Shown here: positions 6,290-61,971 of the stretch, piece after piece
How positions within the stretch are numbered: the first letter of the stretch is position 1
Layout: the number at the start of each line of letters is the position of its first letter
Virus record (IMG/VR): IMGVR_UViG_3300023174_000039
Location: 248,001-312,000 of that record
Direction: 5' to 3' (one strand)
Length of the DNA stretch: 64,000 nt
Notes under the pieces: generated by a model
Told to the model about the DNA's origin: nothing
Database searches by the model: none
What the model saw: the letters and a program-made list of their open reading frames with translations, nothing else
Made by a program: the position numbers and the translations under genes

Positions 6290-7061
6290 CATTTGGGTTC
6301 GGGGCATAAAAGTTTGTTAAATCAATGGGCCTTGATCCTGGCTCATAGTTTTGATATGTGTCAACTACCAGTGCGCTCATCATTCGATTGTTGTAAGAAC
6401 TAAAATGATTGCATCGACGGTCTTGTATCATGTAGTGCTTTATTATTTCTGCGTCAGTTCCTTTGCCCTCACTGAAACTCACATGAATCAATGGTGTTGT
6501 AAACACCACTCCGGGTAGCGCGGACTTGGAGATTTCTACTGTAAACGGATAGTTGTTAAAATGTATTTGTTTGATGTCTTTAAAAGTCCTGTCTATTTCG
6601 TGGAACCATTGCACTTGTGACCAATCTTGAAAAGAGTAATCAATCAAGTCTGCGGCCCAGGATTGTAGGGATTTTGCCAGCGTTGTTTTGTACTTGTACT
6701 TGGCATCATCTGAGTGCGGTTTCCAATCCAGGTTTAACATTTCATTTCCCACATCTCCATTTTCGCTATTGTACCTGGTGCTGTTGGTGTGACAAAATAC
6801 CATGAGTTCAATGGATTCAATCCATTCAGGATCATACTCCATATGATCAAATAGTTGTTTACGAGAATAATACCAACTGCGACCAGCAAATCCAAAACTG
6901 TACAAGTTCAACTCCAATGCCTCCGCAGTTAAATCCAGCCAACTCTTATTTTTTGGGTCAGAGTCTTTCTGCTGGGCCATCTTGTGCGGTATCACACTGT
7001 CCTCATTCCAACAACTGCAGAAACTGTCACCTACAAATACTATGTTTTTTTTAAATGGCAT
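6252..7061 (-). CDS. SGNH/GDSL hydrolase-like protein (probable start 7061, MPFKKNIVFVGDSF)
   Basis: VFVGDSF block, AGRS, C-terminal NHFS. The ATG at 7061 abuts the upstream gene's stop. Confidence 0.6.
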   Translation of the reverse strand: MPFKKNIVFVGDSFCSCWNEDSVIPHKMAQQKDSDPKNKSWLDLTAEALELNLYSFGFAGRSWYYSRKQLFDHMEYDPEWIESIELMVFCHTNSTRYNSENGDVGNEMLNLDWKPHSDDAKYKYKTTLAKSLQSWAADLIDYSFQDWSQVQWFHEIDRTFKDIKQIHFNNYPFTVEISKSALPGVVFTTPLIHVSFSEGKGTDAEIIKHYMIQDRRCNHFSSYNNRMMSALVVDTYQNYEPGSRPIDLTNFYAPNPNASRWPDPGFGTR

Positions 7062-8463
7062 TGTACCAGCCTGCCAATCTTGGGTAAGTTGCCGCAAAGT
7101 TTTTGCCTCGACGTTGATCGTATTGTTTAAAGAAGCTTTTGAAATCTTTTTGTAATGCCAATACGTTGGCTTCTTCAACATTGCCAGCAAACTCATCTGT
7201 TGTGTGCGCTATGTACTTTTCTTCATGGGGCGCAGTTACTTCCAGCAGATATTTTGAATAGCGTTCAATGTGGTCAATTTCAATATCTGCAAACAACTTT
7301 TTGATATCTGGACCCTTTAAGAAATCTGTAATTTCGTGTGCGTACTGCTCACGCAGTTCTCTAGGTAGTACTACTATGCTCTGAAATGTGGGGAAGCGCA
7401 CAGGATTAACGCTCAGCATGAGTCCACGACTGTGATTGCTATTGGGAGGTGCTGTGCGTTTGCGGTCTGCAAGCCAGTACAGGAACTCAGTAAATCCGTC
7501 GGCAGCGGCTGCACTCAGTGTGCCACATATGCCAGTATTGGCAATCACACCTGAGTTCAGTACCAGGTCTAGATTGCTGTTCCACAGTTCCCAGTCCAGC
7601 CCATCACGCACATACTCCATCTTGTTGCCTGTGCTTTCGGCACTAGTATATACCCATACAGGCACATCAATGCGACTGCATGCGTCTAAGAAACGTTTTA
7701 GTGTGTCTTGATCGTAGGCCAAGTTAGTGGTCATTTCTATACGACAATCAGTCTTGGAAGTGTTGTTGGCCAGCCAATCCAGTAACTTCCAGGTGTGACC
7801 TGACATCATTGGCTCGCCGCCACTGATTCGTATTTGTTTGATGGTTTTGTGCAGGCTAGAATCCCACCATTTAAAGAACGCATCGGCATAGGGGTTGTCC
7901 TCACCAAATGTATATCCTATTGCTTCGTCGCCAGTGGTTAGATAATGATTACGATGATCAGTTGGTAAATTTGTATAAGCACCGTTTTTGCGAATATCTT
8001 TAGCCCAGGTTGTGCTGATGGTTGGGGCACAATAACTGCATCCTAAATTGCAAGTGCGATCAAAACATATTTCCAAATAAGTCAGATCATAATCGTTTTC
8101 AGAACTGGAAGTGAACGCAGTGTTCAGCAACTCTGGACTCATTTGGCCACCCCAGGTGGTCCACACACGATCGCTGAGACCATCTGGTTCAACGTCTTCC
8201 ATTACCCAGCAGAATTGACAATTCTTGGGCTTGAGTCCCTGTTGCATCATGAGTCTCTCTTGTTTTTTAATGGGAGTATTGTGCAGGGCCATTGGGTTGG
8301 TCTTGATTGCTTCCAGGTCTATTAAATGTGGAGGATTATGGTGACAGCTTGTGGTCCATCCTTGGCTGAGCCATAGGCTGCTGTTGTACCATTTAGATCC
8401 ACAAAAACTTGGACTTTTAGAATCCAGGTTGTCAATCTTCCATTGTTTCATATTAATGCTCAT
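7051..8463 (-). CDS. Radical SAM protein with N-terminal twitch-like domain (subtype A)
   Basis: FCGSKW...SCHHNPPH...CQFCW, then CNLGCSYC, SGGEP, YVRDGLDW, C-terminal YDQRRGKNF. Confidence 0.9.
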   Translation of the reverse strand: MSINMKQWKIDNLDSKSPSFCGSKWYNSSLWLSQGWTTSCHHNPPHLIDLEAIKTNPMALHNTPIKKQERLMMQQGLKPKNCQFCWVMEDVEPDGLSDRVWTTWGGQMSPELLNTAFTSSSENDYDLTYLEICFDRTCNLGCSYCAPTISTTWAKDIRKNGAYTNLPTDHRNHYLTTGDEAIGYTFGEDNPYADAFFKWWDSSLHKTIKQIRISGGEPMMSGHTWKLLDWLANNTSKTDCRIEMTTNLAYDQDTLKRFLDACSRIDVPVWVYTSAESTGNKMEYVRDGLDWELWNSNLDLVLNSGVIANTGICGTLSAAAADGFTEFLYWLADRKRTAPPNSNHSRGLMLSVNPVRFPTFQSIVVLPRELREQYAHEITDFLKGPDIKKLFADIEIDHIERYSKYLLEVTAPHEEKYIAHTTDEFAGNVEEANVLALQKDFKSFFKQYDQRRGKNFAATYPRLAGWYNAI

Positions 8464-9110
8464 TGTATTCCTGTCAATTTATTTTTTAATACCGGGACAA
8501 TTACTTGATTGTAGTATCGTTGATGTCCGTCGTTGTTGGGATGGTCGCACACTGATGATTCTGCTTTGGTCCACTTGAAATCAGCAAAAGATAAAAACTG
8601 CGAATCACGCAGTCGATCAAGCACATGGTTATTCAGAGAAGGTATGTGTACAGGGTCAGGCATACACCAGAGAAAATCTGCACCCACCAGCTGGGCAGAA
8701 GCATATGCAGCCAACAATGTTGTGATTGAACTAGCATGCCCTATTCTATCACTGTACAAATATTTGTAGTAGTGTTCTACGGCTGTTTCAAGTTGAGGAA
8801 ATGTGCGATCTGACTGCCAGTTTGGGCCAATTGATTCGGCTGCATTTTCAGTGCGTCTGATTTGAATTCGAGCGGCAAACGACACACAACATATAACCAA
8901 TTTGATATCGTCGGTTAGTTCTTGATGTAATCGTTCCACAATAGATGCATTGCTGTAGCCTGGGCGGGAACGATTGTCCACTGTGACAGCAAACTCTTTT
9001 TGTATTAAACTAGGCCATGCATACTCACTTGGTTTAGCAATATAACCCATGGGGGTATCCGAGCATCCTTGACCAAAGGTAAAACTATCTCCTAATACCA
9101 CAATTTTCAT
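8460..9110 (-). CDS. SGNH/GDSL hydrolase-like protein
   Basis: LGDSFTFG, NRSRPGYSN, C-terminal DHPNNDGH. Confidence 0.75.
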   Translation of the reverse strand: MKIVVLGDSFTFGQGCSDTPMGYIAKPSEYAWPSLIQKEFAVTVDNRSRPGYSNASIVERLHQELTDDIKLVICCVSFAARIQIRRTENAAESIGPNWQSDRTFPQLETAVEHYYKYLYSDRIGHASSITTLLAAYASAQLVGADFLWCMPDPVHIPSLNNHVLDRLRDSQFLSFADFKWTKAESSVCDHPNNDGHQRYYNQVIVPVLKNKLTGIQ

Positions 9111-10586
9111 TTAGCTACAAACCTTTACATTGTACAACTGTTCAAATCTATCGGCATCAGCACGGTCATTTACCATGGGTTCTCCACGTATGTTTAGACT
9201 TGTGTTGAGCAACATGGCACAACCAGTTTCTTCATGCCAGGCTTCTAGTAGACGTCTGATCCCCGATCCGTCTGCGGGAACTGTTTGCACACGACTAGTG
9301 CCGTCATAATGAACGATAGCAGGAAATAAGTCACGATGCCTGCAACGAGCGATGACTTGCATATACCTACTGTTAGGGAAACCGCTAGGCATATCAAAAT
9401 AATTATGAACATGCTCCTCCAGAATAACTGGCGCAAATGGCCTGAATTGTTGTCTGCGTTTGATTGCATTTACACGTTCCTTTATGTCTGCCCCACGTGG
9501 GTCTGCCAATAATGATCTATTGCCCAAAGCCCTGGGACCAAATTCGGCACGACCACTGGCCACACCCACAATTTTATCCCGTAAAAGACCAGCCACGAGA
9601 TCGCCGACAGGATAGTGACCAGGGATATTGTGGCCCAAATAGGCATTGGTCCAATGTATCTGTTTCCTGTAAGCCAATGCTGCCGCACCAAGGCTACTGC
9701 CAGCATCGCCAGGACAAGGCATAATCCATATGTTATCAAAGTATTTTCCCAAGTTACGATTGGCACTACAGTTAAGAGCCACACCGCCCATGTACACTAA
9801 ATTGTTAGACCACGCAAAGTCACGTGCTCTACGCATTACATTATTGATCAACTGTTCTGCAATGCATTGAGCACCGGCAGCAATGTCATAATCTGACAGA
9901 TCTTTCAAGTATTTACGATCTATTCCTGTGTGTAGATTTTCACGGAATCTTATTTGATCTGAGTCTTTTACTAGTGTTTTCATACCAGTAGCCTGTGTGG
10001 CATCGCCATAGGCTGCCATGCCCATCAAGATGTATTCTTCGTCTAATGGGCGTAGGCCAACGCTGCCAGTAGCCGCAGAGTAGAACAGTCCAATTGAATG
10101 TGGATAACGTTGTGTCCAAAGTTTTCGATATGTTGCATAACCTTTTTGATCATATTCTGCTGCCCAGATTGTAATGGTATCAAATTCACCCACAGCATCA
10201 ATGACCACCACTGTGGCACGATTGTATGGCGAGGTTTGAAATCCTGCTGCCGCATGGCAAGCATGATGGTTGTGTGCGCTTGTGGTAGGTGAGCTCAGCA
10301 GAGCCCGAGGCACTTGTTGTTGTAGCACTTGATCAAGTGTGACTTTGTTCCACTCAATGCCTTGACCAGCATACCATTGTCGTAGTTGTTTAATCCAAGG
10401 ACGCTCGTAGTAGGCCACATGATCCACGCTATCAGTCAATGCATCCTCAATCAGTCCAGAGCAAATATCAGCGTCATTCTTGAGTTTTGAATAACGCTCA
10501 GAATGCCCGGCAAAAAGAATATCGCCCTGATGAATTACAGTAGCGGCAGCGTCGTGAAAACCTGCTGAAATTCCAAGTATTTTCAT
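9111..10586 (-). CDS. O-carbamoyltransferase (NodU/CmcH/TobZ family)
   Basis: HD, ERYSK, HHACHA, DAVGE, LMGMAAYG, GGVALNC, GDAG, EFGPRALGNRS, FRPFAP, RVQTV and LNTSLN..GEP motifs. Confidence 0.93.
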   Translation of the reverse strand: MKILGISAGFHDAAATVIHQGDILFAGHSERYSKLKNDADICSGLIEDALTDSVDHVAYYERPWIKQLRQWYAGQGIEWNKVTLDQVLQQQVPRALLSSPTTSAHNHHACHAAAGFQTSPYNRATVVVIDAVGEFDTITIWAAEYDQKGYATYRKLWTQRYPHSIGLFYSAATGSVGLRPLDEEYILMGMAAYGDATQATGMKTLVKDSDQIRFRENLHTGIDRKYLKDLSDYDIAAGAQCIAEQLINNVMRRARDFAWSNNLVYMGGVALNCSANRNLGKYFDNIWIMPCPGDAGSSLGAAALAYRKQIHWTNAYLGHNIPGHYPVGDLVAGLLRDKIVGVASGRAEFGPRALGNRSLLADPRGADIKERVNAIKRRQQFRPFAPVILEEHVHNYFDMPSGFPNSRYMQVIARCRHRDLFPAIVHYDGTSRVQTVPADGSGIRRLLEAWHEETGCAMLLNTSLNIRGEPMVNDRADADRFEQLYNVKVCS

Positions 10587-10684
10587 TTATAGATAAATGG
10601 ATCTCGTTTGCGTAGTTCTTTTAGTTTTTTGCGATAGCGAATTTCCATGCGAATTCTGTCAATTAAATTTCGAATCCATTTCAT
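10583..10684 (-). CDS. 33-aa basic protein ending RDPFIYK, coupled to the carbamoyltransferase; not in the ORF track
   Basis: MKWIRNLIDRIRMEIRYRKKLKELRKRDPFIYK; ATG one nt after the previous stop, and its TGA overlaps the next ATG (ATGA). Confidence 0.75.
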   Translation of the reverse strand: MKWIRNLIDRIRMEIRYRKKLKELRKRDPFIYK

Positions 10685-10685
10685 A

Positions 10686-11756
10686 TTAAGTTCCTTGTGT
10701 GATACACTGTACCTGACGATCACGAAAGTCAGCATCGCTCCAGTGATAGTTGTATATAGCACTAGAGCAACTGGTTGTTATTTTATACACATCTAAATAG
10801 TTATTTAACATGGACCAGATTGTGGCAGCATCTGTTGTGCCAAAACTCCGGATCAAATTCACTTGTGCCACTCTAGGATGGCCAATGGTGAGTGCTTTGT
10901 TTTCGGGGTCAAATCCATTGGCCACAAGCCATTCTCGGAACTGAGCCAGTTCTTTTATCTGCCACGGATAAGCGCCTGGATCTCTTGCCCACTCTATATC
11001 AAAGTCGCCGGCAGCTTCTGTTTGTGCTCGCAGTGTTGTGGTGGTCAATTCGTTTATGCGACTGTCGCGACCTTCATCATGGAACACTTCCCAATGATGT
11101 TTGCCCACTGCTTTGTTGACGCCCACATACACACCGCCTAGGCTGCGATTGATTGTTTCTATGCCAAACAGTTCATAATCTTCTGGCTGTAATTCGAATC
11201 TTGGTGCATTTAACCAACACATGAGTTGGCTGGGACGCACCCATTCAGGTGCATGTTGTGCCTTGCGCATGCTGAGCACAAGACTTTCATACTCGTGACA
11301 CAACAAGTTTAATTGACGAATGTGCCAACGTGTGGCAGCATCTGCGGCTGTGTAAAACGGACTCATTGCACCTGATACGCCTTGAAGGTCTTCAAAATAA
11401 CGGTGCAATCGATTTGTTTTGCTGTGTATGAGTTTGCCTCCAGGCAACCCATCGCCTACAGCACCTGCAGTAATGGTATTTGTGGTATCAAAATGATCTG
11501 TAATTTGATAGCCCATGTCCGCGGCATTGATGGCGGCAATTGACTGATTGATTTGATCACATATGTACTCTGCTGTTCTAGCACCTTGATGCCATCCAAA
11601 CCAACAGTAGTTCTTTTCTAAATGAAGATTGTTTTGTAATATATCATTCAGTGCCGCCAGCCAACGACGGCTAAGGCTGTGATCTTCTACATCTATGTAC
11701 ACTGGCAATAGGTCACCTGTGTGCATGTTTCTCAATGTTATTTCAATTTGTTCCAA
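10686..11756 (-). CDS. Hypothetical protein in the modification cluster
   Basis: 356-aa ORF tiling between neighbours; no family recognised. Confidence 0.75.
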   Translation of the reverse strand: MEQIEITLRNMHTGDLLPVYIDVEDHSLSRRWLAALNDILQNNLHLEKNYCWFGWHQGARTAEYICDQINQSIAAINAADMGYQITDHFDTTNTITAGAVGDGLPGGKLIHSKTNRLHRYFEDLQGVSGAMSPFYTAADAATRWHIRQLNLLCHEYESLVLSMRKAQHAPEWVRPSQLMCWLNAPRFELQPEDYELFGIETINRSLGGVYVGVNKAVGKHHWEVFHDEGRDSRINELTTTTLRAQTEAAGDFDIEWARDPGAYPWQIKELAQFREWLVANGFDPENKALTIGHPRVAQVNLIRSFGTTDAATIWSMLNNYLDVYKITTSCSSAIYNYHWSDADFRDRQVQCITQGT

Positions 11757-13056
11757 TTTGATCCCACCATTCTTTGACGTCAGTCCGTGCGCTCAATATC
11801 TTTGCCATATCAGTAGGCGCTGTGCGTATGCTTTCTAATTTTAACACACGAGCATGGCCTTTTGCAAGCCCTGCACGATAAGTATCTGGCCATTGTTCCT
11901 CAAACGTTGGTCTAGACTGTAGTTGCAACAACATGTCACGCATGACTTGTGTGCGGCATTGCGGCACTAGATCGTTTATCCAGGAATTCAGCAACGGTCT
12001 GGGCAGAGCCAATGGGCTCATTACAATATCTGGACCAAAGCTGAATATCACCTTGGCCAGCAATTCTACCCCATATTCTTCTGCAAGTTGTTCCACTGCT
12101 AGTATTTCTGTCATGCCCGGCAAGGTCAGCGTAAAGTCCAGGCGCATTTGTCTGCGGTTCTGCTGTATGGCTACGCCTTGTGCAAAGTTGTTTCTGAACT
12201 GTTCGTAGTCAAGTCCTGTGCGGATGTATTCTCCTGTGGCTCCTGTTCCGTCAAGACTGGCGCATATCTGCCAGTCGCGGATACAAGCCAAAATATCCCG
12301 ATATAGATTACAGCCCCTATAGTCAACGCGACTAAGATTGGTATTATACCTTGCATATACTCTACCTCCATCTCCTAATTCCACTATTCTTTTCATGTAG
12401 CGCCAGTGCTGTTCGTACATGAGTGGCTCGCCGCCTACCCAGTATATTTCTTCTACTCTGTGTTCTTCTACTGCTTGTGCAAACTCCGCTTCGATCTGTT
12501 GGTCTTGAAAAGCACTTATTTGAGTTCTTATTTCTGGACGCATCCAATTGTTCTTGGGATTTGACCAGTCTGTCATTTCATTTTGTTTTTGTTCTGTTTC
12601 CCACGCACTGCTCAACATATCGCCACAGGTTCTGCATTTAAAATTGCACAGGTTTGAAAAACGATAATCCCAGCTTACAGGCTTCATTGTTGTGTAGCCA
12701 GTGGCGTCTGTTGTGGCTGCTATGTCTTCGTACTTGTGCTTGAACAAATGCCAGAAGTAGGTTCTGTACACATCTGTGTTCAACAGCTTTGAATTGCATA
12801 CATCACACTCAGGCAAAGTTTCACCGGCCAACATGCGACGACGCACTGATCGCATGTGATCACTGTTCCAATGCTGTTCCAAGGTAATGGGAATGTACCG
12901 GCCTGTGCCTGCCGCAGTGTCTATGTACTGTTCAAAACTCTGTGCTGGTTCTCTAGAGGCACAGCACATTCTTCGTTCAGTTTGGGGGCTTAGGTATGTG
13001 TGCGTCCATGGGGCCATACACAATGATTCGGGTTTATTTTGACTCTGCATATGCAA
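11743..13056 (-). CDS. Radical SAM protein with N-terminal twitch-like domain (subtype B)
   Basis: LCMAPWTH...MCC...CDVC, CNFKCRTC, GGEP, YNTN, EYIRTG. Confidence 0.9.
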   Translation of the reverse strand: MHMQSQNKPESLCMAPWTHTYLSPQTERRMCCASREPAQSFEQYIDTAAGTGRYIPITLEQHWNSDHMRSVRRRMLAGETLPECDVCNSKLLNTDVYRTYFWHLFKHKYEDIAATTDATGYTTMKPVSWDYRFSNLCNFKCRTCGDMLSSAWETEQKQNEMTDWSNPKNNWMRPEIRTQISAFQDQQIEAEFAQAVEEHRVEEIYWVGGEPLMYEQHWRYMKRIVELGDGGRVYARYNTNLSRVDYRGCNLYRDILACIRDWQICASLDGTGATGEYIRTGLDYEQFRNNFAQGVAIQQNRRQMRLDFTLTLPGMTEILAVEQLAEEYGVELLAKVIFSFGPDIVMSPLALPRPLLNSWINDLVPQCRTQVMRDMLLQLQSRPTFEEQWPDTYRAGLAKGHARVLKLESIRTAPTDMAKILSARTDVKEWWDQIGTN

Positions 13057-13981
13057 TTATGGGATTTATTATTTCATTTATTATCCGAGACTCTGCCAAA
13101 TTATGATCATAAAATCGATTGTGATTGTGTTCTAACTTTTGTAATGTCAATTGGTCGTGAGGTACTGGATCAAAATTCTTTACGGTACTGACCAATGCTG
13201 TCAATCTCTCGGTGTAATCACTGATATTATCATAACTTTCGTCAAATAGATTGTCAAATGTTTCAAATCCCTGGGACTGGAGATATTTTAAATGTCCCGC
13301 TTGTGCCATTACCACAAAAGGATGATAAAAAGCCATGGGTTTAAATGTCTTTTCTGTGACAAATATTTCAGGAGCATCCACAAGTGTTTCTGCCACTATG
13401 CTAAAATATGTGCTATCATACCAGTCTGGGTTGAAGTGTCGCTGAAAGTTTACATCATTCATATCATTGTCATTGGGCAAGGTTCTACCATGCATGGTAT
13501 AACTCCATACCAGTTGATCTAGTATTTCTGCCAAGTGCACCACCAATGCGTCGCGATGCTGCCGCCGCTGACGCATCGGCAGCAGTGCCAGTTTTTGATA
13601 GGTCCTATTAGGTTGATAACCGGACCAGTTGGCTTTGTTTAGGCTGGCTTCATTGTACCAAAACCAATTCTGATTGTGCAAAACAAAACAATTCTCTACT
13701 GGGTCAGGGAATTTATGCATTATCTGTGGTGACTCCCATAAATTATCTAATACAATTTTATAAGAATCATTGAGGTACGGTCTATACCAGTCTGTATAAT
13801 ACCAGGCTGAAGAACTGGAGTGTCTAAGAGCATTTGCAACTAACACATGATCATTGCGGTTATAATCAACACCCTCTTGCCAATTTACTATATCAAAATA
13901 TGGTTCTACCAATCTCTGTAGTAGTACTTGATGAAATGATGTCCTGTCATCCTGGTTGATTAATAATTTAAGTCGCGGCAT
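13034..13981 (-). CDS. Glycosyltransferase-like protein, TEK family
   Basis: FSIVAET...FVTEKTFKPM...PFVV...GFETF...DESYD. Confidence 0.55.
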   Translation of the reverse strand: MPRLKLLINQDDRTSFHQVLLQRLVEPYFDIVNWQEGVDYNRNDHVLVANALRHSSSSAWYYTDWYRPYLNDSYKIVLDNLWESPQIMHKFPDPVENCFVLHNQNWFWYNEASLNKANWSGYQPNRTYQKLALLPMRQRRQHRDALVVHLAEILDQLVWSYTMHGRTLPNDNDMNDVNFQRHFNPDWYDSTYFSIVAETLVDAPEIFVTEKTFKPMAFYHPFVVMAQAGHLKYLQSQGFETFDNLFDESYDNISDYTERLTALVSTVKNFDPVPHDQLTLQKLEHNHNRFYDHNLAESRIINEIINPIIAYAESK

Positions 13982-15191
13982 GATTATATGAATAATTTAT
14001 CAATGCTGAAAATTCTGGTTCAACCACAGCTAGGTCTTGTTCACGTTTACGGTCCAGGTCACGTATGCGCATACGCATGATGTTGCCGTCAGTGGATGCA
14101 CCCTTCATCATGAATTCCACAATACGATCAAACTCTTCACGGTACTGAGCAGGTACATCAGCAGAGTTTAAATGGTCTGCAATGGCTGTTTTGGCATCAT
14201 CAGGCAGGGTAGCAATAGAGAAGTACCAGGCATCATGCATCATGTTCCAGTACACAAAGTCAAATTGTTGTTCTACAATCCAGTGGGCCAGTTGATCAAT
14301 ATAGCGCACATTAAAGATATTCACTGTGCTACAGCATTGCAGTTGAATATTGGGATAGTCTTCCCTTAATAAACGAAAACGATCAATATTGAACACCACG
14401 TCTGCCCACACAGCATTTGAACGCTGATACTCAAAGCGTTCGCGCAAGTCATCAATCGAAAATGCAATTTCTACTGTTTTGAAATGCTTCCAGATAGCTT
14501 CTGCTTGTTCAGGAAACTGTGTGCCATTTGTGTTGTAGTGTATTTCAACTTGATGTGCAATACCACGATCCACTAGACCCTGTAACATATTGAAGTGTTC
14601 CTGGATCATGAATGGCTCGCCACCAGTGAATTCAATGTAACGAATGTCAGTCAGAATGTGATCAATTTCTGCCCAGAACGTTTCATTTTCTCTGGGCCAG
14701 GCGCCTGCTTGTAGCATTTGATAATGAAAGCTGGCTTTCTTCTCGTCGCCACGCAGTTGTGTGAGTTCTTCAGCGGCAAATTGACTTGAGCTCCAGGATC
14801 CACATATGCGGCATTTTAAGTTGCAAATGTTGCCCAGTTTGAGATCCATGAACATCAAGGGCTTGGCATCTGCTGTCCAGGCCTGATCGTCAATCACGTG
14901 CTTGAGTCGGTTGAGTGTGTGCATGCGTTTGCTGGTGCGTCCTGAACGCTCTTCGTTCCAGCACTTGCGACATGTCTGTGGCTTTTCGCCATCCAAGAAC
15001 TGTTGCCGTAGACCGCGCATGTGAGTGCTGTTTTGTATGTCTTTAAAGTTGGCAGTCATCAAGCTGAATTTCACGTTGTTGTCATCGACAATTTCGTCAT
15101 CAGCCAAACAGCAAGGGCGCACTGTGCCAATCGGGCTAGCTTCAAGACTGACCCAAGGTAGTACGCAGAATTTTTCGTGTGGTAATTTCAT
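13968..15191 (-). CDS. Radical SAM protein with N-terminal twitch-like domain (subtype B)
   Basis: FCVLPW...PCC...CRKCW, CNLKCRIC, TGGEP, YNTNG. Confidence 0.9.
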   Translation of the reverse strand: MKLPHEKFCVLPWVSLEASPIGTVRPCCLADDEIVDDNNVKFSLMTANFKDIQNSTHMRGLRQQFLDGEKPQTCRKCWNEERSGRTSKRMHTLNRLKHVIDDQAWTADAKPLMFMDLKLGNICNLKCRICGSWSSSQFAAEELTQLRGDEKKASFHYQMLQAGAWPRENETFWAEIDHILTDIRYIEFTGGEPFMIQEHFNMLQGLVDRGIAHQVEIHYNTNGTQFPEQAEAIWKHFKTVEIAFSIDDLRERFEYQRSNAVWADVVFNIDRFRLLREDYPNIQLQCCSTVNIFNVRYIDQLAHWIVEQQFDFVYWNMMHDAWYFSIATLPDDAKTAIADHLNSADVPAQYREEFDRIVEFMMKGASTDGNIMRMRIRDLDRKREQDLAVVEPEFSALINYSYNHAAT

Positions 15192-16477
15192 TTTAATGCT
15201 TTCAATTCAGGAATAACATCCAGGATGTTTTCTTTTCTAATTTCGTCCAGCTGTTGAGTCTTGCTCCAGAATTTAGGGATCAAATGACTGTTGTCTGTAG
15301 CTTGCAAATAGTTAATAGCTGATTCAAAACCCTGTGTGGCACGACCCAACCGGTCCTGGGGGCGTAACCATGCCAGGTGCTGTTGATATAACTCAATCAA
15401 TTCAGCTTTGTATTCTGGTGTGGCAATATCAATTCTATAATACGCAGGGTCTTGCAGTATGTTTACGTTTAGATCCTGAGGGTTTAATAGACCTTTTTCA
15501 ACCCAGTCACGATGAAACTCAGGCAAGTGTTGAGCATTCATAATGCTCAACGTGGGCGAAATATAAAAATCTACTTCAGGACAAATGCTCAGCATGTCTC
15601 TGCGATTTTGTTCCACCACTGACCAGTCTGTGCCCTTGCGTATGTATTCGCCACGTGCACCAGAATCGTCTAGACTTGCGCCCACTGCCACTGATTGAAA
15701 CTGTTTCCAGTATTCAAAAACTGAGTTACCTTTAAGGTCTGTGTGTGTGAAGTTTGTGTTGTATATTAGTCGTACATCAAATCGTTGGCGTTTGACCAGC
15801 TCGTCAAGAATATGATAGTGTTCTTCCATCAACAGCGGTTCGCCGCCGGCAAAATAAATTTGTTCTACATAGTCTAGATGCGGCTCTAGTTGTTCCCACA
15901 CATCTGTTTCTGTGCGGCCAGCATAGTTGAGAACTTTGTTTTTTTGTTTCCAATCACCGCCGGCCAATTTGGCTTGATCTTGATACCACGAACTACTAAA
16001 GATATGACCACAACTGCGGCAACTTAGATTGCACAGATTACTGAAGCGAATGTCCCAGTAGGTCATTTCAAATTGGTCAGTATGTCCTGTAGAATCTGTA
16101 GCTTGTACTCGATCCACATGGTGCCCATGGTGCTTGTTTGCTGATTGTCGCCCTGTGAAGAAACCCGATTGTTCTTGTTCGTAGCAACGTCCGCAGGCAG
16201 CATTGGGTATTTCACTCAGCATGTCCTTGCGCAATTGGCGCTGTGCTGGGCTATTCCATATTTCTTTAAGAGTGTTTGTGCGACAATTGCCAATTTGCCC
16301 CACACCCATTTCGGCGTGACAGCACGGGTATGCTTCGCCTGTGGGGTAGGCATGTAAATGAATCCAAGGATAGATACAGAAAGTTTTGGATTCTGTCAAC
16401 AAGAATCTTTCACGTTCTGTCAGTGCGCTCATGTCTCCACGCACTAGATCACTGCTGTTGTATTTGTATTGTGTCAT
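15188..16477 (-). CDS. Radical SAM protein with N-terminal twitch-like domain (subtype B)
   Basis: FCIYPWIH...PCC...CGRCY, CNLSCRSC, AGGEP, YNTN. Confidence 0.9.
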   Translation of the reverse strand: MTQYKYNSSDLVRGDMSALTERERFLLTESKTFCIYPWIHLHAYPTGEAYPCCHAEMGVGQIGNCRTNTLKEIWNSPAQRQLRKDMLSEIPNAACGRCYEQEQSGFFTGRQSANKHHGHHVDRVQATDSTGHTDQFEMTYWDIRFSNLCNLSCRSCGHIFSSSWYQDQAKLAGGDWKQKNKVLNYAGRTETDVWEQLEPHLDYVEQIYFAGGEPLLMEEHYHILDELVKRQRFDVRLIYNTNFTHTDLKGNSVFEYWKQFQSVAVGASLDDSGARGEYIRKGTDWSVVEQNRRDMLSICPEVDFYISPTLSIMNAQHLPEFHRDWVEKGLLNPQDLNVNILQDPAYYRIDIATPEYKAELIELYQQHLAWLRPQDRLGRATQGFESAINYLQATDNSHLIPKFWSKTQQLDEIRKENILDVIPELKALK

Positions 16478-17801
16478 ACCATTCTTTTAAGTTGGGGAAT
16501 ACGCTGCCAAAATTCTTGTGTCTGCGATGATCGTATTGCGAATAGAACTGTTTGAAATCATTGTGCAGTGAAGGCATGTCAAATGTGTCCGAATGAGGGG
16601 TCTTTACTACATCTAGGTAATCAATTAGCCGTTGTGTGTGATTTACTTCGTGTTCGTGCAACAAAGAGTTGGTACAATTGTTTGCAAGCCATTTTTCTAG
16701 CGCCACACGGAATTGTTCACGCAGTTCTGTGGGCATTACAAGTGCAGATTGAAAACTGGGAAAGCGCAAGATATTTAATGTAAAATTCACACGTTCACGA
16801 CCGTATGTGCGTTTTAATTCCAGCAATTGATCTAGTAACTCGGGCAATGTGGGCAGGCACAAGGCATTGATTGTACACATCACGTGTACTGCTTTTACTG
16901 TATTACTCTGCAACAGCAGGTTTATGTTTGAAAGCCATTGTGCATAGTCCAGGCCGTCACGTATGTACTCAGCACTTGTACCAGTGGCTTCCATACTGGT
17001 GTAAAGTTCCACATGCGGCAGTGAACGGATGGCATCAATGAACTCCTGCAGTTTTTCGGTATCAAAACTCAGATTTGAATTGATAGCTAGTTTTGTAGTT
17101 GACTTGCCCTGATTTGTTTTGAACCAATCAATCAGCTTCCAGGTGTAGCCCGACATCAAGGGCTCTCCGCCGGTTATTCTTAGTTCTTGCAAGGTTTTGT
17201 GGAGGTCTGTTTCCCACCATTCAAAGAAGGCGTTGACGTAAGGATTATCCTCACCGAATTTATAAAGTTGAGCACTATTATGCTCATGAGTAAAGTGGTT
17301 GCGACCATCTGACTGTAACTTAACATAAGGTCCATTTCGCTTGATGTCATTGACCCATGTGCTTGAAAATGCAGGATTGCAGTAACTACAAGCAAGCTGG
17401 CAAGTGCGATCAAAAGCAATTTCCAAGGTGCGTAGGTTAACGTCTTCGTGTACAGGTGTGTTAAAAGCTTCATTTAATGATTCTATAGGATATATCTTTG
17501 ATTTATACACACGATCGCTCACAGCATCACGACCCATGTCTTCAATCTTCCAACAGTACTCGCAGCCTGCTGGTCGTTCACCTGCTAGCATTTTTGCACG
17601 ATCATCACGTTTTTGTCGTGTGTTATGCAAGGCAGCAGGATTAATAATTACTTCTTTTTCAGTCACGTGATGTGCTGGTGGATGATGACAACTTGTGGTT
17701 TGTCCTGAGCCCAACCAGATGGTTGCATTGTACCATTTAGCGGCACAAAAACTAGCTGACTTGGTATCAAGGTGTTGTTGACGGAATTCTAGATCGTTCA
17801 T
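16449..17801 (-). CDS. Radical SAM protein with N-terminal twitch-like domain (subtype A)
   Basis: FCAAKW...SCHHPPAH...CEYCW, CQLACSYC, TGGEP; close paralogue of 7051..8463. Confidence 0.9.
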   Translation of the reverse strand: MNDLEFRQQHLDTKSASFCAAKWYNATIWLGSGQTTSCHHPPAHHVTEKEVIINPAALHNTRQKRDDRAKMLAGERPAGCEYCWKIEDMGRDAVSDRVYKSKIYPIESLNEAFNTPVHEDVNLRTLEIAFDRTCQLACSYCNPAFSSTWVNDIKRNGPYVKLQSDGRNHFTHEHNSAQLYKFGEDNPYVNAFFEWWETDLHKTLQELRITGGEPLMSGYTWKLIDWFKTNQGKSTTKLAINSNLSFDTEKLQEFIDAIRSLPHVELYTSMEATGTSAEYIRDGLDYAQWLSNINLLLQSNTVKAVHVMCTINALCLPTLPELLDQLLELKRTYGRERVNFTLNILRFPSFQSALVMPTELREQFRVALEKWLANNCTNSLLHEHEVNHTQRLIDYLDVVKTPHSDTFDMPSLHNDFKQFYSQYDHRRHKNFGSVFPNLKEWYDTIQIQQQ

Positions 17802-18891
17802 TTAAAAATTGCTCTAATAGTAAGGGAAGGTGAGCACGTTGTTGTTGGTTGTACTCCACAAGATGTTGCTGATTGTATTTACAGATGTCGCGGCTGGCTC
17901 GCCAGAAATGTTCAGGACCACTTTTCAAAATATAACGCACTGTTTCTATTATACGCTTGATCCTGGCATGTGGACAATCAATTTGGTCGTAGGATTCATC
18001 TATAATGCCATCAAATGTTTGAAAGCCAGCATGCTGTAGGTCTCGAAGATAGCCGCAATTGGCAGCAACCACAAACGGATGTGCCATCAGAATTGGCTTG
18101 TAGATCTTTTCTGTTCTAAATGAATACGGATAATCAAATATGGTTTCTGACACTAGGCTAAACCAAGAGTCTGTGTAGCAAAAATGATTAACTATGGCAT
18201 CGCCCCAGGTGTTACCAAACAACTCATGCTTGATAAAACCCGATGTGCTCACCGTGGTCAATTGTGGCACAGCACGTGAAATTTCATACTCTGGAGGCAG
18301 TAATCTTATGTGCTCCTGTTTGTCGGGAGTGAGTCTGGATGTGAATTCCATTTCTACTGTGCTGCCTAGATTGGTCCACAATGCACGATCCAATAGTCCT
18401 TGATCACGCAGACCGTCAATTAAACATTTACGATGGGGGCGTAAGCGGCCGTTTAAAAACAAAAACTCATAGGGTCTTGAATCTGTATACTCCCATAATG
18501 CTTGTATCTGTGATGCCCGATTTTCCCTGTATTCAACAATGTTTGAAAAGTAACAATCTGTACTGAAATGATTCCACCCAGGTTCTAGGCCACCAGATGT
18601 CATTAACAGTATGCGGCCATCACGCACATGGTCTTCTATCATGAGTCGTTTCAATTGTAGCAGGATAGTTTCGCTTCCTTCTGCAGGATTACAAAATACA
18701 ATCCGACCCGGATGTTCCGTTGCCCATGTGGTTATTGCTGTCCAGTTGTCTTTTAACAACAGCCGCCCAATGATGTAAATATTTTCTGGATTCAAGTCAG
18801 GCATTTGCCAAAATGAGTCGTCGGCATAGGGCTTGAGTAAATCCCACACTTCAGCCCATTCGTCTACCACAATCTTATGTGTTCCTAGCAT
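17767..18891 (-). CDS. Glycosyltransferase-like protein, TEK family
   Basis: FSLVSET...FRTEKIYKPI...HPFVV...GFQTF...DESYD. Confidence 0.55.
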   Translation of the reverse strand: MLGTHKIVVDEWAEVWDLLKPYADDSFWQMPDLNPENIYIIGRLLLKDNWTAITTWATEHPGRIVFCNPAEGSETILLQLKRLMIEDHVRDGRILLMTSGGLEPGWNHFSTDCYFSNIVEYRENRASQIQALWEYTDSRPYEFLFLNGRLRPHRKCLIDGLRDQGLLDRALWTNLGSTVEMEFTSRLTPDKQEHIRLLPPEYEISRAVPQLTTVSTSGFIKHELFGNTWGDAIVNHFCYTDSWFSLVSETIFDYPYSFRTEKIYKPILMAHPFVVAANCGYLRDLQHAGFQTFDGIIDESYDQIDCPHARIKRIIETVRYILKSGPEHFWRASRDICKYNQQHLVEYNQQQRAHLPLLLEQFLNERSRIPSTTP

Positions 18892-20266
18892 GATACTTGC
18901 ATTCGGCCCACCAGGCTCGCATTTCAGGAAACGTATTTAAAAAGTCTGTGCCTCTACGGCGATCGTGCTCACTAAAGAATCTATAGAAATCGGCTTGTGC
19001 TACAGCATTAGACTGTGATTGACCTTCACGCATCCAGGCAATATCTCGTTCCAGGCGCTGTACTTCGTAGTCTTTGAATCCGTGCAAAGGATTAGCGTCA
19101 GTTGTCATGTTGTCCAGCATGAAGTTTCTGGCACGTTCTAGTTGCACAGCATAGCTTTCTGGCAACAGTTGTAGACTTTGCCAAGCAGGTTCACGGAGCA
19201 CAGGTGTATCAAACCACACACGTTGATATGTAGCAGAATGCTTTTTGCGCAGAGCAAGTATCCATTCTAGCAATACTGGCAAGCCAGTCACTGTGAGATT
19301 GTTCATTGTGATAATAAACGTTAGACTATTGCGGTTTGGTATCTCGTGCAAGAATCGTTCAACGTTTCGGGCCATACGTGCATAGTCCAGGCCATGGCGT
19401 ATGTACTCGGCTTGTGCGGCATGGCCAGAATCCAAACTAACATACTGCATGAAGTGTTCAATACGCGGAGTACATAGTTTTTTGGCATAATCCATGTACT
19501 TTTCAAACAATGTGTCTTCTACTGAAAAGTTAGATGTCACATTCAAGTGCAGTTTGGGATTGTCGTGCTCTAACACATAGTCAAATACTCTGTAGGTATT
19601 ACGATCCATGAGTGGTTCGCCGCCGGTCATGCGGAAGTGTTCCAGCTGTGGGTACAGTGTGGGCCACCATTCCCAAAATGCATCTACGTAAGGGTTAGCA
19701 GTCCGATTAGGAATAGGTCTGCGATCACCACTGAAATGTTCAGGTGCATTATGAGGGCGACTGGTGGGGTAAGCCCCAAGTCTTTCCATTTCATCTTGCC
19801 AGCTTGAACTAAACTGGGGTGAGCAATAACTACATTTAAGATTACAAGCGTGATTAAAATTAACTTCCACATAACTGGGGATAATATCATCTTCGTTTCC
19901 CGTGCTGTTACGAATTTTTTCTAGATCCACAGCGGCCCAAGGTTCACCTGAACGATAGTGCCGATCACTCAGCTTGCCTAGATTTTCCATGTTCCAACAG
20001 TACTGACATTCACTGGGTTTTTCACCAGACAACATCATTTTTCTTTGTGCTTTTTTATGATCAGTATTGTGCAAGCCACCTGGACGTTTTATATCTTCTG
20101 GGCTGATGCGATGCAGTGGAGGATGGTAGCAAGAATTGTTTAGTCCTGTTGGCAAGTGAAAACTAACTTGTTTCCACTTGGCCAGACACAGCGCCGGGCC
20201 AAGTTCTTGTTGCATCTGCTCGGCAGAGCTCATAAACCCGCTTTGATCACCTTTGCTCATTACCAA
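18875..20266 (-). CDS. Radical SAM protein with N-terminal twitch-like domain (subtype A)
   Basis: LCLAKW...SCYHPPLH...CQYCW, CNLKCSYC, TGGEP, C-terminal HDRRRGTDF. Confidence 0.9.
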   Translation of the reverse strand: MVMSKGDQSGFMSSAEQMQQELGPALCLAKWKQVSFHLPTGLNNSCYHPPLHRISPEDIKRPGGLHNTDHKKAQRKMMLSGEKPSECQYCWNMENLGKLSDRHYRSGEPWAAVDLEKIRNSTGNEDDIIPSYVEVNFNHACNLKCSYCSPQFSSSWQDEMERLGAYPTSRPHNAPEHFSGDRRPIPNRTANPYVDAFWEWWPTLYPQLEHFRMTGGEPLMDRNTYRVFDYVLEHDNPKLHLNVTSNFSVEDTLFEKYMDYAKKLCTPRIEHFMQYVSLDSGHAAQAEYIRHGLDYARMARNVERFLHEIPNRNSLTFIITMNNLTVTGLPVLLEWILALRKKHSATYQRVWFDTPVLREPAWQSLQLLPESYAVQLERARNFMLDNMTTDANPLHGFKDYEVQRLERDIAWMREGQSQSNAVAQADFYRFFSEHDRRRGTDFLNTFPEMRAWWAECKYHARNT

Positions 20267-61929: not shown

Positions 61930-61971
61930 ATTGACGAGCAAAGCGAGTCAATAGAACTTCGTAGAAGTTCT
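61930..61971. terminator. Two tandem hairpins at the convergence of the + and - operons
   Basis: attgac...gtcaat (61930-52) and agaacttc-gta-gaagttct (61953-71), abutting the stop of the nucleosidase gene. Confidence 0.5.

What the first reader, a model, noticed from the sequence alone, without database searches (positions are those of the whole stretch)
7051..20266. Six radical SAM paralogues with the auxiliary Cys cluster at the N-terminus, in two subtypes of three
Seen: subtype A (7051, 16449, 18875) has CxxKW...SC(H/Y)HxPxH...CxxCW...SDR. Subtype B (11743, 13968, 15188) has CxxPW...CC...CxxC. Both precede the CxxxCxxC motif, and all end in a (D/E)xxR motif. Known: SPASM/twitch domains are normally C-terminal. 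Inference: a permuted architecture, with His possibly replacing a Cys ligand in subtype A. The 3+3 count could reflect paired or sequential steps.
Basis: partly seen in the sequence, partly recalled or inferred. Interest (0 to 1): 0.7.

Follow-up and report, generated by a model that had tools for sequence, protein, structure and literature searches.

The report
Phage radical SAM enzymes beside glycosyltransferases
The six genes are real members of an already catalogued but unstudied family of radical SAM enzymes whose extra iron-sulfur domain sits at the front of the protein; they lie in a freshwater giant phage that carries 14 such genes, mostly next to sugar-transferring enzymes, so they most likely tailor a phage-made glycan.

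Summary
Six minus-strand ORFs at the stated coordinates encode radical SAM proteins with a Cys-rich N-terminal domain ahead of CxxxCxxC.

The architecture is not new. All six score 260-405 bits against NCBIfam NF033640, "N_Twi_rSAM, twitch domain-containing radical SAM protein" (cut-off 170).

Four N-terminal cysteines are conserved in all six proteins and their orthologues, enough for one fully ligated auxiliary cluster. The His/Tyr of subtype A stands where subtype B has a fifth cysteine, not at a core ligand position.

"3+3" is an accident of this window. The 331-kb freshwater jumbo phage has 14 paralogues. The conserved core has two A and three B genes. Copy 7051 is a recent duplicate. B is not a clade.

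The context points to glycan work. The genes interleave with GT-B and GT-A-like glycosyltransferases and a carbamoyltransferase. Natural fusions join subtype A modules to GT2 and to the 20260-type protein. The same pairing recurs in unrelated bacterial and metagenomic loci.

The phage also encodes a SAM synthetase and an MTA/SAH nucleosidase. I found no characterised member.

Best reading: radical carbohydrate-tailoring enzymes of a phage glycan pathway. The chemistry and the acceptor are unknown.

The parts
18875..20266 (-). N-twitch radical SAM protein, subtype A (463 aa). Twitch Cys at C27, C46, C87, C90; CxxxCxxC at C141/145/148; GGEP at 215-218.
   Evidence: NF033640 312 bits. AF2 model pLDDT 90.2. 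About 70% median identity in 80 related loci. All cluster cysteines 100% conserved.
16449..17801 (-). N-twitch radical SAM protein, subtype A (450 aa)
   Evidence: NF033640 305 bits. 50.6% identical to Ralstonia phage RsoM2USA gp202. Its reading frame overlaps 15188's by 29 nt.
7051..8463 (-). N-twitch radical SAM protein, subtype A (470 aa); a lineage-specific duplicate of 16449
   Evidence: NF033640 260 bits. 43% identical to 16449. An orthologue above 50% identity in only 2 of 80 related loci. Tree placement inside the 16449 group.
15188..16477 (-). N-twitch radical SAM protein, subtype B (429 aa); the member closest to the family consensus
   Evidence: NF033640 405 bits. Pfam SPASM 45.6 bits at residues 34-99. 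More than 7,700 relatives scored, with the top 120 all at least 76% identical.
13968..15191 (-). N-twitch radical SAM protein, subtype B (407 aa)
   Evidence: NF033640 332 bits. Pfam SPASM 26.4 bits at residues 9-78. 73% median identity in related loci.
11743..13056 (-). N-twitch radical SAM protein, subtype B (437 aa); divergent C-terminal part
   Evidence: NF033640 267 bits, profile positions 2-358 only. 74% median identity in related loci.
20260..21192 (-). Putative GT-A-like glycosyltransferase (310 aa) with a conserved ILIDGDN (DxD-type) motif, directly upstream of 18875
   Evidence: 82% mean column identity in alignment A2. Atlas nearest clusters are named 'Glycosyltransferase 2-like' at score 0.99. 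Natural fusion P0174 joins this family to a subtype A radical SAM module (A2 HMM E 9.4e-20). A homologue lies in the radical SAM/GT2 array of L098 (E 3e-63). Not confirmed by a structure.
17767..18891 (-). GT-B-fold glycosyltransferase (374 aa), between the two conserved subtype A genes
   Evidence: AF2 model pLDDT 91.3. The top 17 Foldseek PDB hits, and nearly all 50 listed, are GT-B glycosyltransferases: EXT1/2, SenB, PglA, alpha-1,3-fucosyltransferase, T4 BGT, WaaG.
13034..13981 (-). Paralogue of the 17767 GT-B family (315 aa); variable among related phages
   Evidence: Same BLAST paralogue family of five. Aligned in A4. No orthologue above 50% identity in related loci.
1230..3474 (+). Two further paralogues of the 17767 GT-B family (1230-2336 and 2320-3474)
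   Evidence: Paralogue family; alignment A4.
21504..23088 (-). Paralogous pair 21504-22292 and 22249-23088; possibly GT8-like GT-A glycosyltransferases (weak evidence)
   Evidence: Paralogues. phrog_1903. The A7 profile gives only weak PDB hits, but most are to one fold class: glycogenin-1/2 at E 0.1-0.6 and NleB at E about 1.
21173..21514 (-). Small conserved protein (113 aa), function unknown; looks globular, not like a peptide precursor
   Evidence: Conserved along its whole length in 14 aligned orthologues. Present in 68 of 80 loci.
10686..11756 (-). Conserved protein of unknown function (356 aa)
   Evidence: 67 of 80 loci, 65% median identity. No Pfam, NCBIfam, PHROG, PDB-profile or Atlas lead. 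Unrelated to the GT families.
9111..10586 (-). NodU/CmcH-type carbamoyltransferase (491 aa)
   Evidence: Pfam Carbam_trans_N 2.2e-34 and Carbam_trans_C 4.7e-49. 45.5% identical to RsoM2USA gp199, which lies close to the subtype A homologue gp202. Also lies at the end of the radical SAM arrays in L093 and L101.
8460..9110 (-). SGNH/GDSL-like protein (216 aa); weak assignment
   Evidence: Pfam Lipase_GDSL_2 E 1e-4, below the gathering score. GDSL genes also flank family members in G152 and L099.
5174..6289 (+). Canonical radical SAM protein with a C-terminal SPASM domain (371 aa), divergently transcribed from the cluster
   Evidence: Pfam Radical_SAM at 14-156 and SPASM at 252-301. Paralogue of 59758-60768.
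61971..62531 (-). MTA/SAH nucleosidase (Pfs/MtnN) homologue; could clear 5'-deoxyadenosine made by the radical SAM enzymes
   Evidence: Pfam PNP_UDP_1 9.7e-20. All 40 PDB sequence hits are MTA/SAH or aminodeoxyfutalosine nucleosidases, best E 2e-12. The role in 5'-dAdo removal is from general knowledge of the family, not tested here.

Best explanation
The six genes encode functional radical SAM enzymes of the N-terminal-twitch family (NCBIfam NF033640).

Each protein has three parts:
- An N-terminal domain of about 100 residues. It has a beta-hairpin and helices, and four invariant cysteines (C-x17/18-C-x~40-C-x2-C) that should fully ligate one auxiliary [4Fe-4S] cluster.
- A partial TIM-barrel core with CxxxCxxC and GGEP, which binds the SAM-cleaving cluster.
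- A helical C-terminal region with a conserved (D/E)xxR motif.

They belong to a conserved operon of a freshwater jumbo phage. The operon is a glycan assembly and tailoring line. Glycosyltransferases (GT-B, GT-A-like) add sugars. The radical SAM paralogues each abstract a hydrogen from an unactivated sugar carbon to carry out a tailoring step: oxidation, epimerisation, deoxygenation or decarboxylation. This is what twitch enzymes such as BtrN and BlsE do on carbohydrates. The auxiliary cluster would serve as the electron conduit. A carbamoyltransferase and an SGNH-type enzyme add further decorations.

The phage backs this chemistry with its own SAM synthetase and MTA/SAH (5'-deoxyadenosine) nucleosidase.

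Shown here: family membership, motif conservation, fold, synteny, gene fusions and genomic co-occurrence with glycosyltransferases.

Inferred: cluster binding, a carbohydrate substrate, the kind of reaction, and the acceptor. The acceptor may be the neighbouring giant fibre-like protein or another virion or cell-surface glycoconjugate.
For: Membership and catalytic motifs.

Fold:
- AF2 model pLDDT 90.2.
- The nearest solved structures are SPASM/twitch-subgroup enzymes: SkfB Z 14.1, BlsE 13.9, SuiB, anSME, MoaA; DesII also ranks high.

N-domain is a twitch:
- Pfam SPASM hits above threshold at the N-terminus of subtype B.
- A-to-B N-domain hhalign 97%.
- Only 4-5 cysteines, with none of the second-cluster cysteines.

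Glycan context in the window:
- The 17767 family of five paralogues has the GT-B fold.
- 20260 is GT2-like by Atlas name and DxD motif.
- Carbamoyltransferase.
- Weak GT8-like pair.
- Sugar epimerase/dehydratases and a DegT aminotransferase lie about 5 kb upstream of the window and at about 203 kb.

Rosetta-stone fusions: P0162 is a subtype A radical SAM module fused to GT2. P0174 is a 20260-type domain fused to a subtype A radical SAM module.

Independent recurrences:
- Bacteroidota chromosome G152: SGNH, four N-twitch radical SAM genes, a MTase-GT2 fusion and two GT-C genes.
- L098 (GC 30%): six N-twitch radical SAM genes, five GT2 genes and a 20260 homologue.
- L099/L100 (GC 60%): GT2, GT4, GDSL and B12-radical SAM genes.

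Conservation: the operon core is conserved at 50-78% identity in 80 related loci out of 185 viral contigs.

Support genes: MetK and an MTA/SAH nucleosidase.
Against: - No biochemical datum exists for any family member that I could find.
- The bacterial locus G080 pairs the family with PhyH/WelO5-type oxygenases and a methyltransferase, not with glycosyltransferases.
- Eight of the 14 paralogues lie outside the glycan region. Several sit among replication and packaging genes.
- No sugar nucleotidyltransferase was found in the phage.
- The best structural match, SkfB, is a peptide-modifying enzyme. Structural similarity is confined to the core at 10-16% identity.
- The GT assignments for 20260 and 21504/22249 rest on weak or indirect evidence.
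Confidence: 0.5

Rival explanations
1. The enzymes modify a protein or peptide. The target could be the neighbouring 4,936-aa fibre-like protein or another virion protein, with cross-links, epimerised residues or oxidised side chains. The glycosyltransferases would then glycosylate the modified protein.
For: - Most characterised SPASM/twitch enzymes act on peptides or proteins. The top structural hits include SkfB, SuiB, anSME, CteB and AlbA.
- Some family members are fused to TPR or Sel1 protein-interaction repeats.
- In G080 the family lies beside five PhyH dioxygenases and a T9SS-secreted protein with a tail-fibre chaperone domain.
- The phage cluster abuts the tail and baseplate module and the giant FG-GAP protein.
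Against: - No RRE/PqqD-like domain was detected by Pfam; the N-terminus is taken up by the twitch domain.
- No short hypervariable precursor ORF is present. The only small conserved ORF (21173) looks globular.
- Scores to RiPP-maturase models are far below their cut-offs.
- The fusions are to glycosyltransferases.
Confidence: 0.2
2. The enzymes act on nucleotides or DNA. With the glycosyltransferases and the carbamoyltransferase they would form a DNA hypermodification pathway, or they would make modified nucleotides in a viperin-like way.
For: - The phage has T4-like replication and packaging genes, and several paralogues lie among them.
- T4 beta-glucosyltransferase is among the GT-B fold hits.
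- Viperin structures and the NCBIfam viperin model give weak hits.
Against: - No thymidylate-synthase-type dNMP hydroxymethylase and no TGT/DpdA in a genome estimated 95% complete.
- Viperin model scores are 18-30 bits against a cut-off of 180.
- The better GT-B matches are glycan and protein glycosyltransferases.
- The bacterial contexts with GT-C and GT2 enzymes point to envelope glycans.
Confidence: 0.12
3. Subtypes A and B form obligate heterodimers or matched pairs, each pair carrying out one two-step reaction.
For: - A and B genes are adjacent and translationally coupled; the 16449 and 15188 reading frames overlap by 29 nt.
- Bacterial loci also combine divergent family members.
- Tandem fusions show that paralogues can work in one polypeptide.
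Against: - The conserved core has 2 A and 3 B genes, and the third A is a recent duplicate.
- The genome has 14 paralogues.
- Tandem fusions are B-B (20) or A-A (2), and no A-B fusion was identified.
- RsoM2USA carries a subtype A gene beside the carbamoyltransferase with no B-type neighbour in that 17-kb locus.
- The complex prediction gave no verdict, so it counts neither way.
Confidence: 0.08

Closest known systems
NCBIfam NF033640, N_Twi_rSAM (twitch domain-containing radical SAM protein)
   Same: All six proteins match end to end (profile positions about 1-398) at 260-405 bits against a cut-off of 170. They share the N-terminal 4-Cys domain, CxxxCxxC and GGEP.
   Different: Nothing separates them from the family. 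What is added here:
- A 14-fold expansion in one jumbo phage.
- A His-rich sub-clade (A).
- The link to glycosyltransferases.
The family has no assigned function.
Twitch-domain radical SAM enzymes acting on carbohydrates (BtrN, BlsE; also DesII, which lacks a twitch)
   Same: - One auxiliary cluster site with four cysteines arranged Cys / hairpin / Cys ... CxxC, as described for BtrN's fully ligated cluster (PMC6231123, read).
- BlsE (Z 13.9) and DesII (Z 12.1) are among the best structural matches.
- A sugar-pathway gene context.
   Different: - Here the twitch domain is N-terminal to the core, not C-terminal.
- Sequence identity is only 13-16%.
- There is an additional C-terminal helical region with (D/E)xxR.
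- The substrate and reaction are unknown.
- The exact Cys numbering of BtrN is from my memory and was not checked.
Canonical C-terminal SPASM enzymes (anSME, AlbA, SuiB, CteB, PqqE)
   Same: The Pfam SPASM model matches the N-domain of subtype B above threshold. The radical SAM cores superpose at Z 11-13.
   Different: - The domain order is reversed.
- Only the first half of the seven-Cys motif is present, so one cluster rather than two.
- There is no RRE.
Radical SAM enzymes with other N-terminal auxiliary clusters (LipA, MiaB/RimO, TYW1)
   Same: The auxiliary cluster lies ahead of the core in sequence. LipA and LIAS align from about residue 22-24 of the model, at Z 10.5-10.8.
   Different: - The N-terminal fold and Cys motif are different.
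- Those clusters are sulfur donors or substrate anchors.
- There is no sequence relation to SPASM/twitch (general knowledge).
Virus-encoded glycosylation systems (T4 DNA glucosyltransferases, mycobacteriophage virion glycosylation, giant-virus fibril glycans)
   Same: A virus carries its own glycosyltransferases and sugar-modifying enzymes.
   Different: To my knowledge none of those systems uses arrays of radical SAM enzymes. This comparison rests on memory, not on a test here.

Membership tests
NF033640 N_Twi_rSAM | Whole-protein HMM score above the curated cut-off (170 bits) | tested here: met
   260, 305.5, 312.2, 266.6, 332.2 and 405 bits for the six proteins. 13 places in the genome are above the cut-off.
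NF033640 N_Twi_rSAM | Radical SAM core with CxxxCxxC and a SAM-binding GGE motif | tested here: met
   C138/C142/C145 and G215-G216-E217-P218 are invariant in A1 and in the 44-sequence A5.
NF033640 N_Twi_rSAM | Twitch-type Cys domain N-terminal to the core | tested here: met
   Four cysteines are conserved in all six proteins, in most of the 14 phage paralogues, in the bacterial homologues and in about 80 orthologues per gene. The model has a beta-hairpin (33-37, 42-44) followed by helices.
SPASM/twitch domain (Pfam PF13186) | Significant match to the SPASM model | tested here: met
   - 15188: 45.6 bits. 13968: 26.4 bits. Threshold 21.5.
- 11743 is below threshold at 16.6 bits.
- Subtype A gives no direct hit but is homologous to the B N-domain at hhalign 97%.
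SPASM/twitch domain (Pfam PF13186) | Domain located C-terminal to the radical SAM core | tested here: not met
   The domain occupies roughly residues 10-105, ahead of CxxxCxxC. In the canonical protein L099_4410 the same profile positions align at residues 276-338.
SPASM (two auxiliary clusters) | Seven-Cys motif CX9-15GX4C...CX2CX5CX3C...C | tested here: not met
   Only C...GX4C(C)...CX2C is present. No cysteines follow CxxC before the core. The motif definition is from PMC6231123. [quoted passage not shown]
SPASM/twitch radical SAM enzymes | The auxiliary [4Fe-4S] cluster is actually bound, near the active site | not testable with these tools
   This needs Fe/S analysis, EPR or Mossbauer spectroscopy, or a structure.
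RiPP maturases of the SPASM group | RRE/PqqD-like leader-binding domain and a nearby precursor peptide | tested here: not met
   - No RRE-type Pfam hit.
- Scores to RiPP-maturase NCBIfam models are 16-24 bits against cut-offs of 340-650.
- The only small conserved ORF is globular-looking.
Viperin-like radical SAM (NF038283) | HMM score above the cut-off (180 bits) | tested here: not met
   18-30 bits.
Carbohydrate-tailoring twitch enzymes (BtrN/BlsE type) | Turnover of a sugar or aminocyclitol substrate | not testable with these tools
   Only indirect support: structural rank of BlsE and DesII, glycosyltransferase fusions and neighbours.

The most novel reading that the evidence does not exclude
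N-twitch radical SAM enzymes and glycosyltransferases form repeating 'add a sugar, then edit it by radical chemistry' modules. The modules are sometimes fused into one protein. They build a heavily C-H-functionalised glycan on the virion or fibre of a widespread clade of freshwater jumbo phages. This would be a previously undescribed kind of glycan biosynthesis, and the first function for a family of more than 8,000 sequence clusters.
Probability: 0.3. Interest if true: 0.8.

Novelty: new member of a known kind. Interest (0 to 1): 0.5.

Why it matters
The family is large: 8,234 representatives of 50%-identity clusters at E <= 1e-30. It is curated by name only, and I found no solved structure, Swiss-Prot entry or paper that gives it a function.

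This phage clade offers an unusually rich natural experiment:
- Up to 14 paralogues in one genome.
- Five of them in a strongly conserved operon.
- Clear partner enzymes, including natural fusions to glycosyltransferases.

If the glycan-tailoring reading holds, it would add radical SAM chemistry to the known ways viruses decorate themselves or their hosts. It would also supply candidate enzymes for C-H functionalisation of sugars.

The phage's own SAM synthetase and MTA/SAH nucleosidase suggest that it invests in sustaining this chemistry during infection.

Tried and rejected
- Alignment A1 was too divergent for the search for related loci in genome contigs. 'Relatives' cannot be drawn for a virus record.
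- The single-protein scan of genome contigs found only two contigs of a Haliscomenobacter MAG. Both proved to be mis-binned phage contigs: all matches above the cut-off lie on C1 and C3.
- PDB sequence-profile searches gave nothing for the partner proteins 20260, 10686 and 17767. 10686 stays unexplained after hhalign against both GT families and an Atlas search.
- The subtype A N-domain profile alone finds neither the window's canonical SPASM region nor any PDB twitch domain; only chance zinc-finger-like CxxC hits appear.
- The complex prediction of 16449 + 15188 scored 0.00. That is no verdict, and it is not evidence for or against binding.
- Model coordinates are not exposed, so Cys-Cys and cluster-to-cluster distances could not be measured.
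- No phage-encoded flavodoxin or plant-type ferredoxin was found.
- DNA-hypermodification markers (ThyA-like hydroxymethylase, TGT/DpdA) were absent.
- Literature searches for the architecture or for a characterised member found nothing relevant. The library lacks most subscription journals, so absence there is weak evidence.
- No RNA run holds the locus, so expression could not be examined.

Full report
**What is there.** The window is bases 248,001-312,000 of a 331,654-bp IMG/VR virus record that CheckV estimates to be 95% complete. Phage hallmarks are present. In the window there is a baseplate hub (47051-48550, phrog_13211), an SbcCD-like pair and a 4,936-aa FG-GAP protein. Elsewhere in the genome there is a T4-type large terminase, a UvsX/RecA-like gene, a UvsW-like gene and a weak gp32-like hit. 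The terminase is closest to the PA5oct-like jumbo phages, at about 53% identity. Public runs holding the locus are lake, river and other freshwater metagenomes. One run from an independent study holds 79% of the sampled words, so the locus is not an assembly artefact.

**The observation.** Their alignment shows the reported motifs. Invariant columns in 7051 numbering are C21, W25, C40, N62, R70, C82, C85 and R99, then C138/C142/C145 and GGEP 215-218. A (D/E)xxR motif lies near the C-terminus in all six. This is homology, not chance: each protein matches one curated model end to end at E 4e-77 to 3.5e-121.

**The architecture is real but already catalogued.** That model is NCBIfam NF033640, 'N_Twi_rSAM, twitch domain-containing radical SAM protein'. 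The six proteins score 260-405 bits against a cut-off of 170.
- Pfam's SPASM model matches the N-terminus of 15188 (residues 34-99, 45.6 bits) and 13968 (9-78, 26.4 bits), above its 21.5-bit threshold. 11743 falls just below.
- Subtype A gives no direct SPASM hit. Its N-domain profile still matches the subtype B N-domain profile at 97% probability, E 7.9e-11, over 90 columns.
- In a canonical radical SAM/SPASM protein (L099_4410), my family profile's N-domain positions 23-90 align at residues 276-338, behind the core. This shows the reversed order directly.
- Only the first half of the seven-Cys SPASM motif is present. The motif is as quoted in PMC6231123. No cysteines follow CxxC before the core. 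The domain is therefore a twitch with a single cluster site.

**Cysteines and histidines.** Across about 80 orthologues of each conserved gene, the four N-terminal cysteines and the three of CxxxCxxC are 100% conserved. The four are also kept in most of the phage's 14 paralogues and in the bacterial homologues. Their layout is one Cys before a hairpin, one after it at G-x4-C, and CxxC after a helix. This is the layout described for BtrN's fully ligated twitch cluster (PMC6231123). Subtype B has a fifth cysteine, also 100% conserved, adjacent to the second one (the 'CC'). Profile-profile alignment puts subtype A's cysteine opposite the first C of CC, and A's Tyr (18875) or His (16449, 7051) opposite the second C. 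Some bacterial members also lack that second C. So histidine does not replace one of the four core ligands. The conserved subtype A residues (K-W, S-C-[H/Y]-H-P-P..H, LHNT, SDR) may shape the substrate pocket or tune the cluster, but that is conjecture.

**Structure.** The AF2 model of 18875, built on a 44-sequence alignment, has pLDDT 90.2 and pTM 0.90. It has an N-terminal hairpin plus helices, a beta/alpha core and a helical C-terminal region.
- Foldseek and VIA-align both rank SPASM/twitch-subgroup enzymes first: SkfB Z 14.1, BlsE 13.9, SuiB 13.1, anSME 13.1, MoaA 12.8; DesII scores 12.1.
- In the best SPASM/twitch matches only residues from about 105-131 onward align, at 10-16% identity.
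- No Swiss-Prot model shares the whole architecture. TM by query is at most 0.37.

**'Three plus three' does not hold.** The genome has 14 paralogues by BLAST clustering, and 13 score above the family cut-off. In a maximum-likelihood tree, subtype A is a supported clade (99/96) that also contains a paralogue at genome position 43,693, with 29,347 as its sister. The subtype B genes are deep, separate branches; bacterial homologues fall among them, though on weakly supported forks. Among 80 loci from 185 related viral contigs, five of the genes are conserved in place at 70-76% median identity: 11743, 13968, 15188, 16449 and 18875. Gene 7051 has an orthologue above 50% identity in only two loci, and it groups inside the 16449 lineage. 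Of 28 two-module natural fusions among the 150 best family representatives, 20 are B-B, 2 are A-A and 6 have one unclassified half; none was identified as A-B by simple motif rules. A complex prediction for the translationally coupled pair 16449 + 15188 returned no verdict.

**Context.** The operon is tightly packed, with overlapping stop and start codons. The radical SAM genes are interleaved with other conserved genes.
- 17767 has four paralogues (13034, 1230, 2320 and one at genome position 88,821). It folds confidently (pLDDT 91.3), and the top 17 PDB matches, with nearly all of the 50 listed, are GT-B glycosyltransferases.
- 20260 is 82% conserved, carries an ILIDGDN motif, and falls in Atlas clusters named 'Glycosyltransferase 2-like' at score 0.99.
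- 9111 is a NodU/CmcH-type carbamoyltransferase.
- 8460 is weakly SGNH-like.
- The pair 21504/22249 gives weak hits, mostly to glycogenin and NleB, which are GT-A folds.
- 10686 and 21173 remain unknown.
- About 5 kb upstream of the window, and again at about 203 kb, the phage encodes NAD-dependent sugar epimerase/dehydratases next to DegT-type aminotransferase sequences.
- The 2,047-aa protein that runs off the window's left edge ends in a 20260-like domain.

**Links beyond this phage.**
- P0162 fuses a subtype A N-twitch module to a GT2 domain.
- P0174 fuses a 20260-type domain to a subtype A module, reproducing the gene order 20260 then 18875.
- Contig L098 (GC 30%) has six N-twitch genes, five GT2 genes and a 20260 homologue within 20 kb.
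- Contigs L099/L100 (GC 60%) place a Sel1-fused member among GT2, GT4, GDSL and B12-radical SAM genes.
- In a Bacteroidota chromosome (G152), four tandem members are flanked by an SGNH-like gene, a methyltransferase-GT2 fusion and two GT-C enzymes.
- Ralstonia phage RsoM2USA has a subtype A homologue (gp202, 50.6% identity) close to a carbamoyltransferase (gp199, 45.5%).
- L093 and L101 again end their radical SAM arrays with a carbamoyltransferase.
- One bacterial locus differs: G080 pairs two members with five PhyH dioxygenases, a WelO5-like enzyme and a methyltransferase.
- The family is rare in cellular genomes: 3 of 300 sampled Bacteroidota, apart from a MAG contaminated by phage contigs.

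**Support genes.** The phage encodes a SAM synthetase right after one paralogue (genome 30,973-32,142). It also encodes an MTA/SAH nucleosidase homologue in the window (61971-62531). From general knowledge, that enzyme family also hydrolyses 5'-deoxyadenosine, the inhibitory by-product of radical SAM turnover. No flavodoxin or plant-type ferredoxin was found, so reduction presumably uses host donors.

**Interpretation.** I think the six proteins are carbohydrate-tailoring radical SAM enzymes of a phage glycan pathway, with a confidence of about 0.5. Each would act after, or together with, a glycosyl transfer. The fully ligated twitch cluster would serve electron transfer, as proposed for BtrN and anSME (PMC6231123). 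The kind of reaction and the acceptor are unknown. The neighbouring giant fibre-like protein is a candidate acceptor by position only. The rivals are:
- Protein or peptide modification (0.2). It is favoured by the family's structural kin and the G080 context. It is weakened by the absence of an RRE or a precursor peptide.
- Nucleotide or DNA modification (0.12). It is weakened by the absence of hydroxymethylase and TGT/DpdA genes.
- Obligate A/B pairing (0.08).

**Novelty.** Three things appear undescribed in what I could search: the scale of the expansion in a widespread freshwater jumbo-phage clade, the His-rich subtype A, and the repeated coupling to glycosyltransferases, including gene fusions. 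The paper library lacks most subscription journals, so a characterised member could exist that I did not see.

Noticed in passing
window 26994-41804 (-): A single 4,936-aa ORF with FG-GAP repeats (Pfam 3.6e-15). It is followed by a 1,155-aa ORF and the baseplate hub. It is probably a giant fibre or tail-associated protein, and it is a candidate acceptor for the neighbouring glycan cluster.
   Followed up: partly
genome C1:30973-32142 (+), outside the window: A phage-encoded S-adenosylmethionine synthetase (all three MetK domains, E 3e-58 to 4e-32), directly downstream of the N-twitch paralogue at 29347-30591.
   Followed up: partly
window 61971-62531 (-): An MTA/SAH nucleosidase homologue of 186 aa, which seems short at the N-terminus compared with PDB relatives of about 230 aa. 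With MetK it could form a radical SAM support kit: SAM supply plus 5'-deoxyadenosine removal.
   Followed up: partly
window 2-1231 (-), continuing to genome C1:243088: The ORF that runs off the window's left edge is a 2,047-aa protein. Its C-terminal residues 1817-2033 resemble the 20260 GT-A-like family (E 1.5e-13 to P0174's N-domain). It lies next to a DegT aminotransferase and an epimerase/dehydratase at 241-243 kb.
   Followed up: partly
L081/L082 (NZ_JBBAKG010000003.1 and ...001.1): Two contigs (148 kb and 183 kb) of a 'Haliscomenobacter sp.' MAG carry the same radical SAM operon at 72-74% identity. They hold all of that MAG's family matches above the cut-off. They look like two mis-binned jumbo-phage genomes, or at best a hint about the host.
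   Followed up: partly
window 5174-6289 (+) and 59758-60768 (+): Two further radical SAM genes, paralogous to each other, with the ordinary layout. The first has a C-terminal SPASM domain. So the phage carries both domain orders side by side.
   Followed up: partly
P0121-P0155: Many family representatives are double or triple N-twitch radical SAM modules in a single polypeptide of 800-1,400 aa, nearly all of the same subtype (20 B-B, 2 A-A).
   Followed up: partly
L091 (G080:C2:1208000-1227999): A Bacteroidota chromosomal cluster with five PhyH dioxygenases, a WelO5-like enzyme, a methyltransferase, a reductive-dehalogenase-like Fe-S protein and two N-twitch radical SAM genes. It lies beside a T9SS-secreted protein with a tail-fibre chaperone (Peptidase_S74) domain. 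Its product is unknown.
   Followed up: no
window 3461-4486 (+) and 4509-5177 (+): A 341-aa protein with three paralogues elsewhere in the genome and 83% identity across related phages, with no family assignment. Next to it is a DUF6071-like protein with a weak relative beside the subtype A gene of RsoM2USA.
   Followed up: no
genome C1:203765-204331 (+), outside the window: A second DegT-type aminotransferase sequence appears split, with one TAG inside the match. It may be a pseudogene, a frameshift or an assembly error.
   Followed up: no
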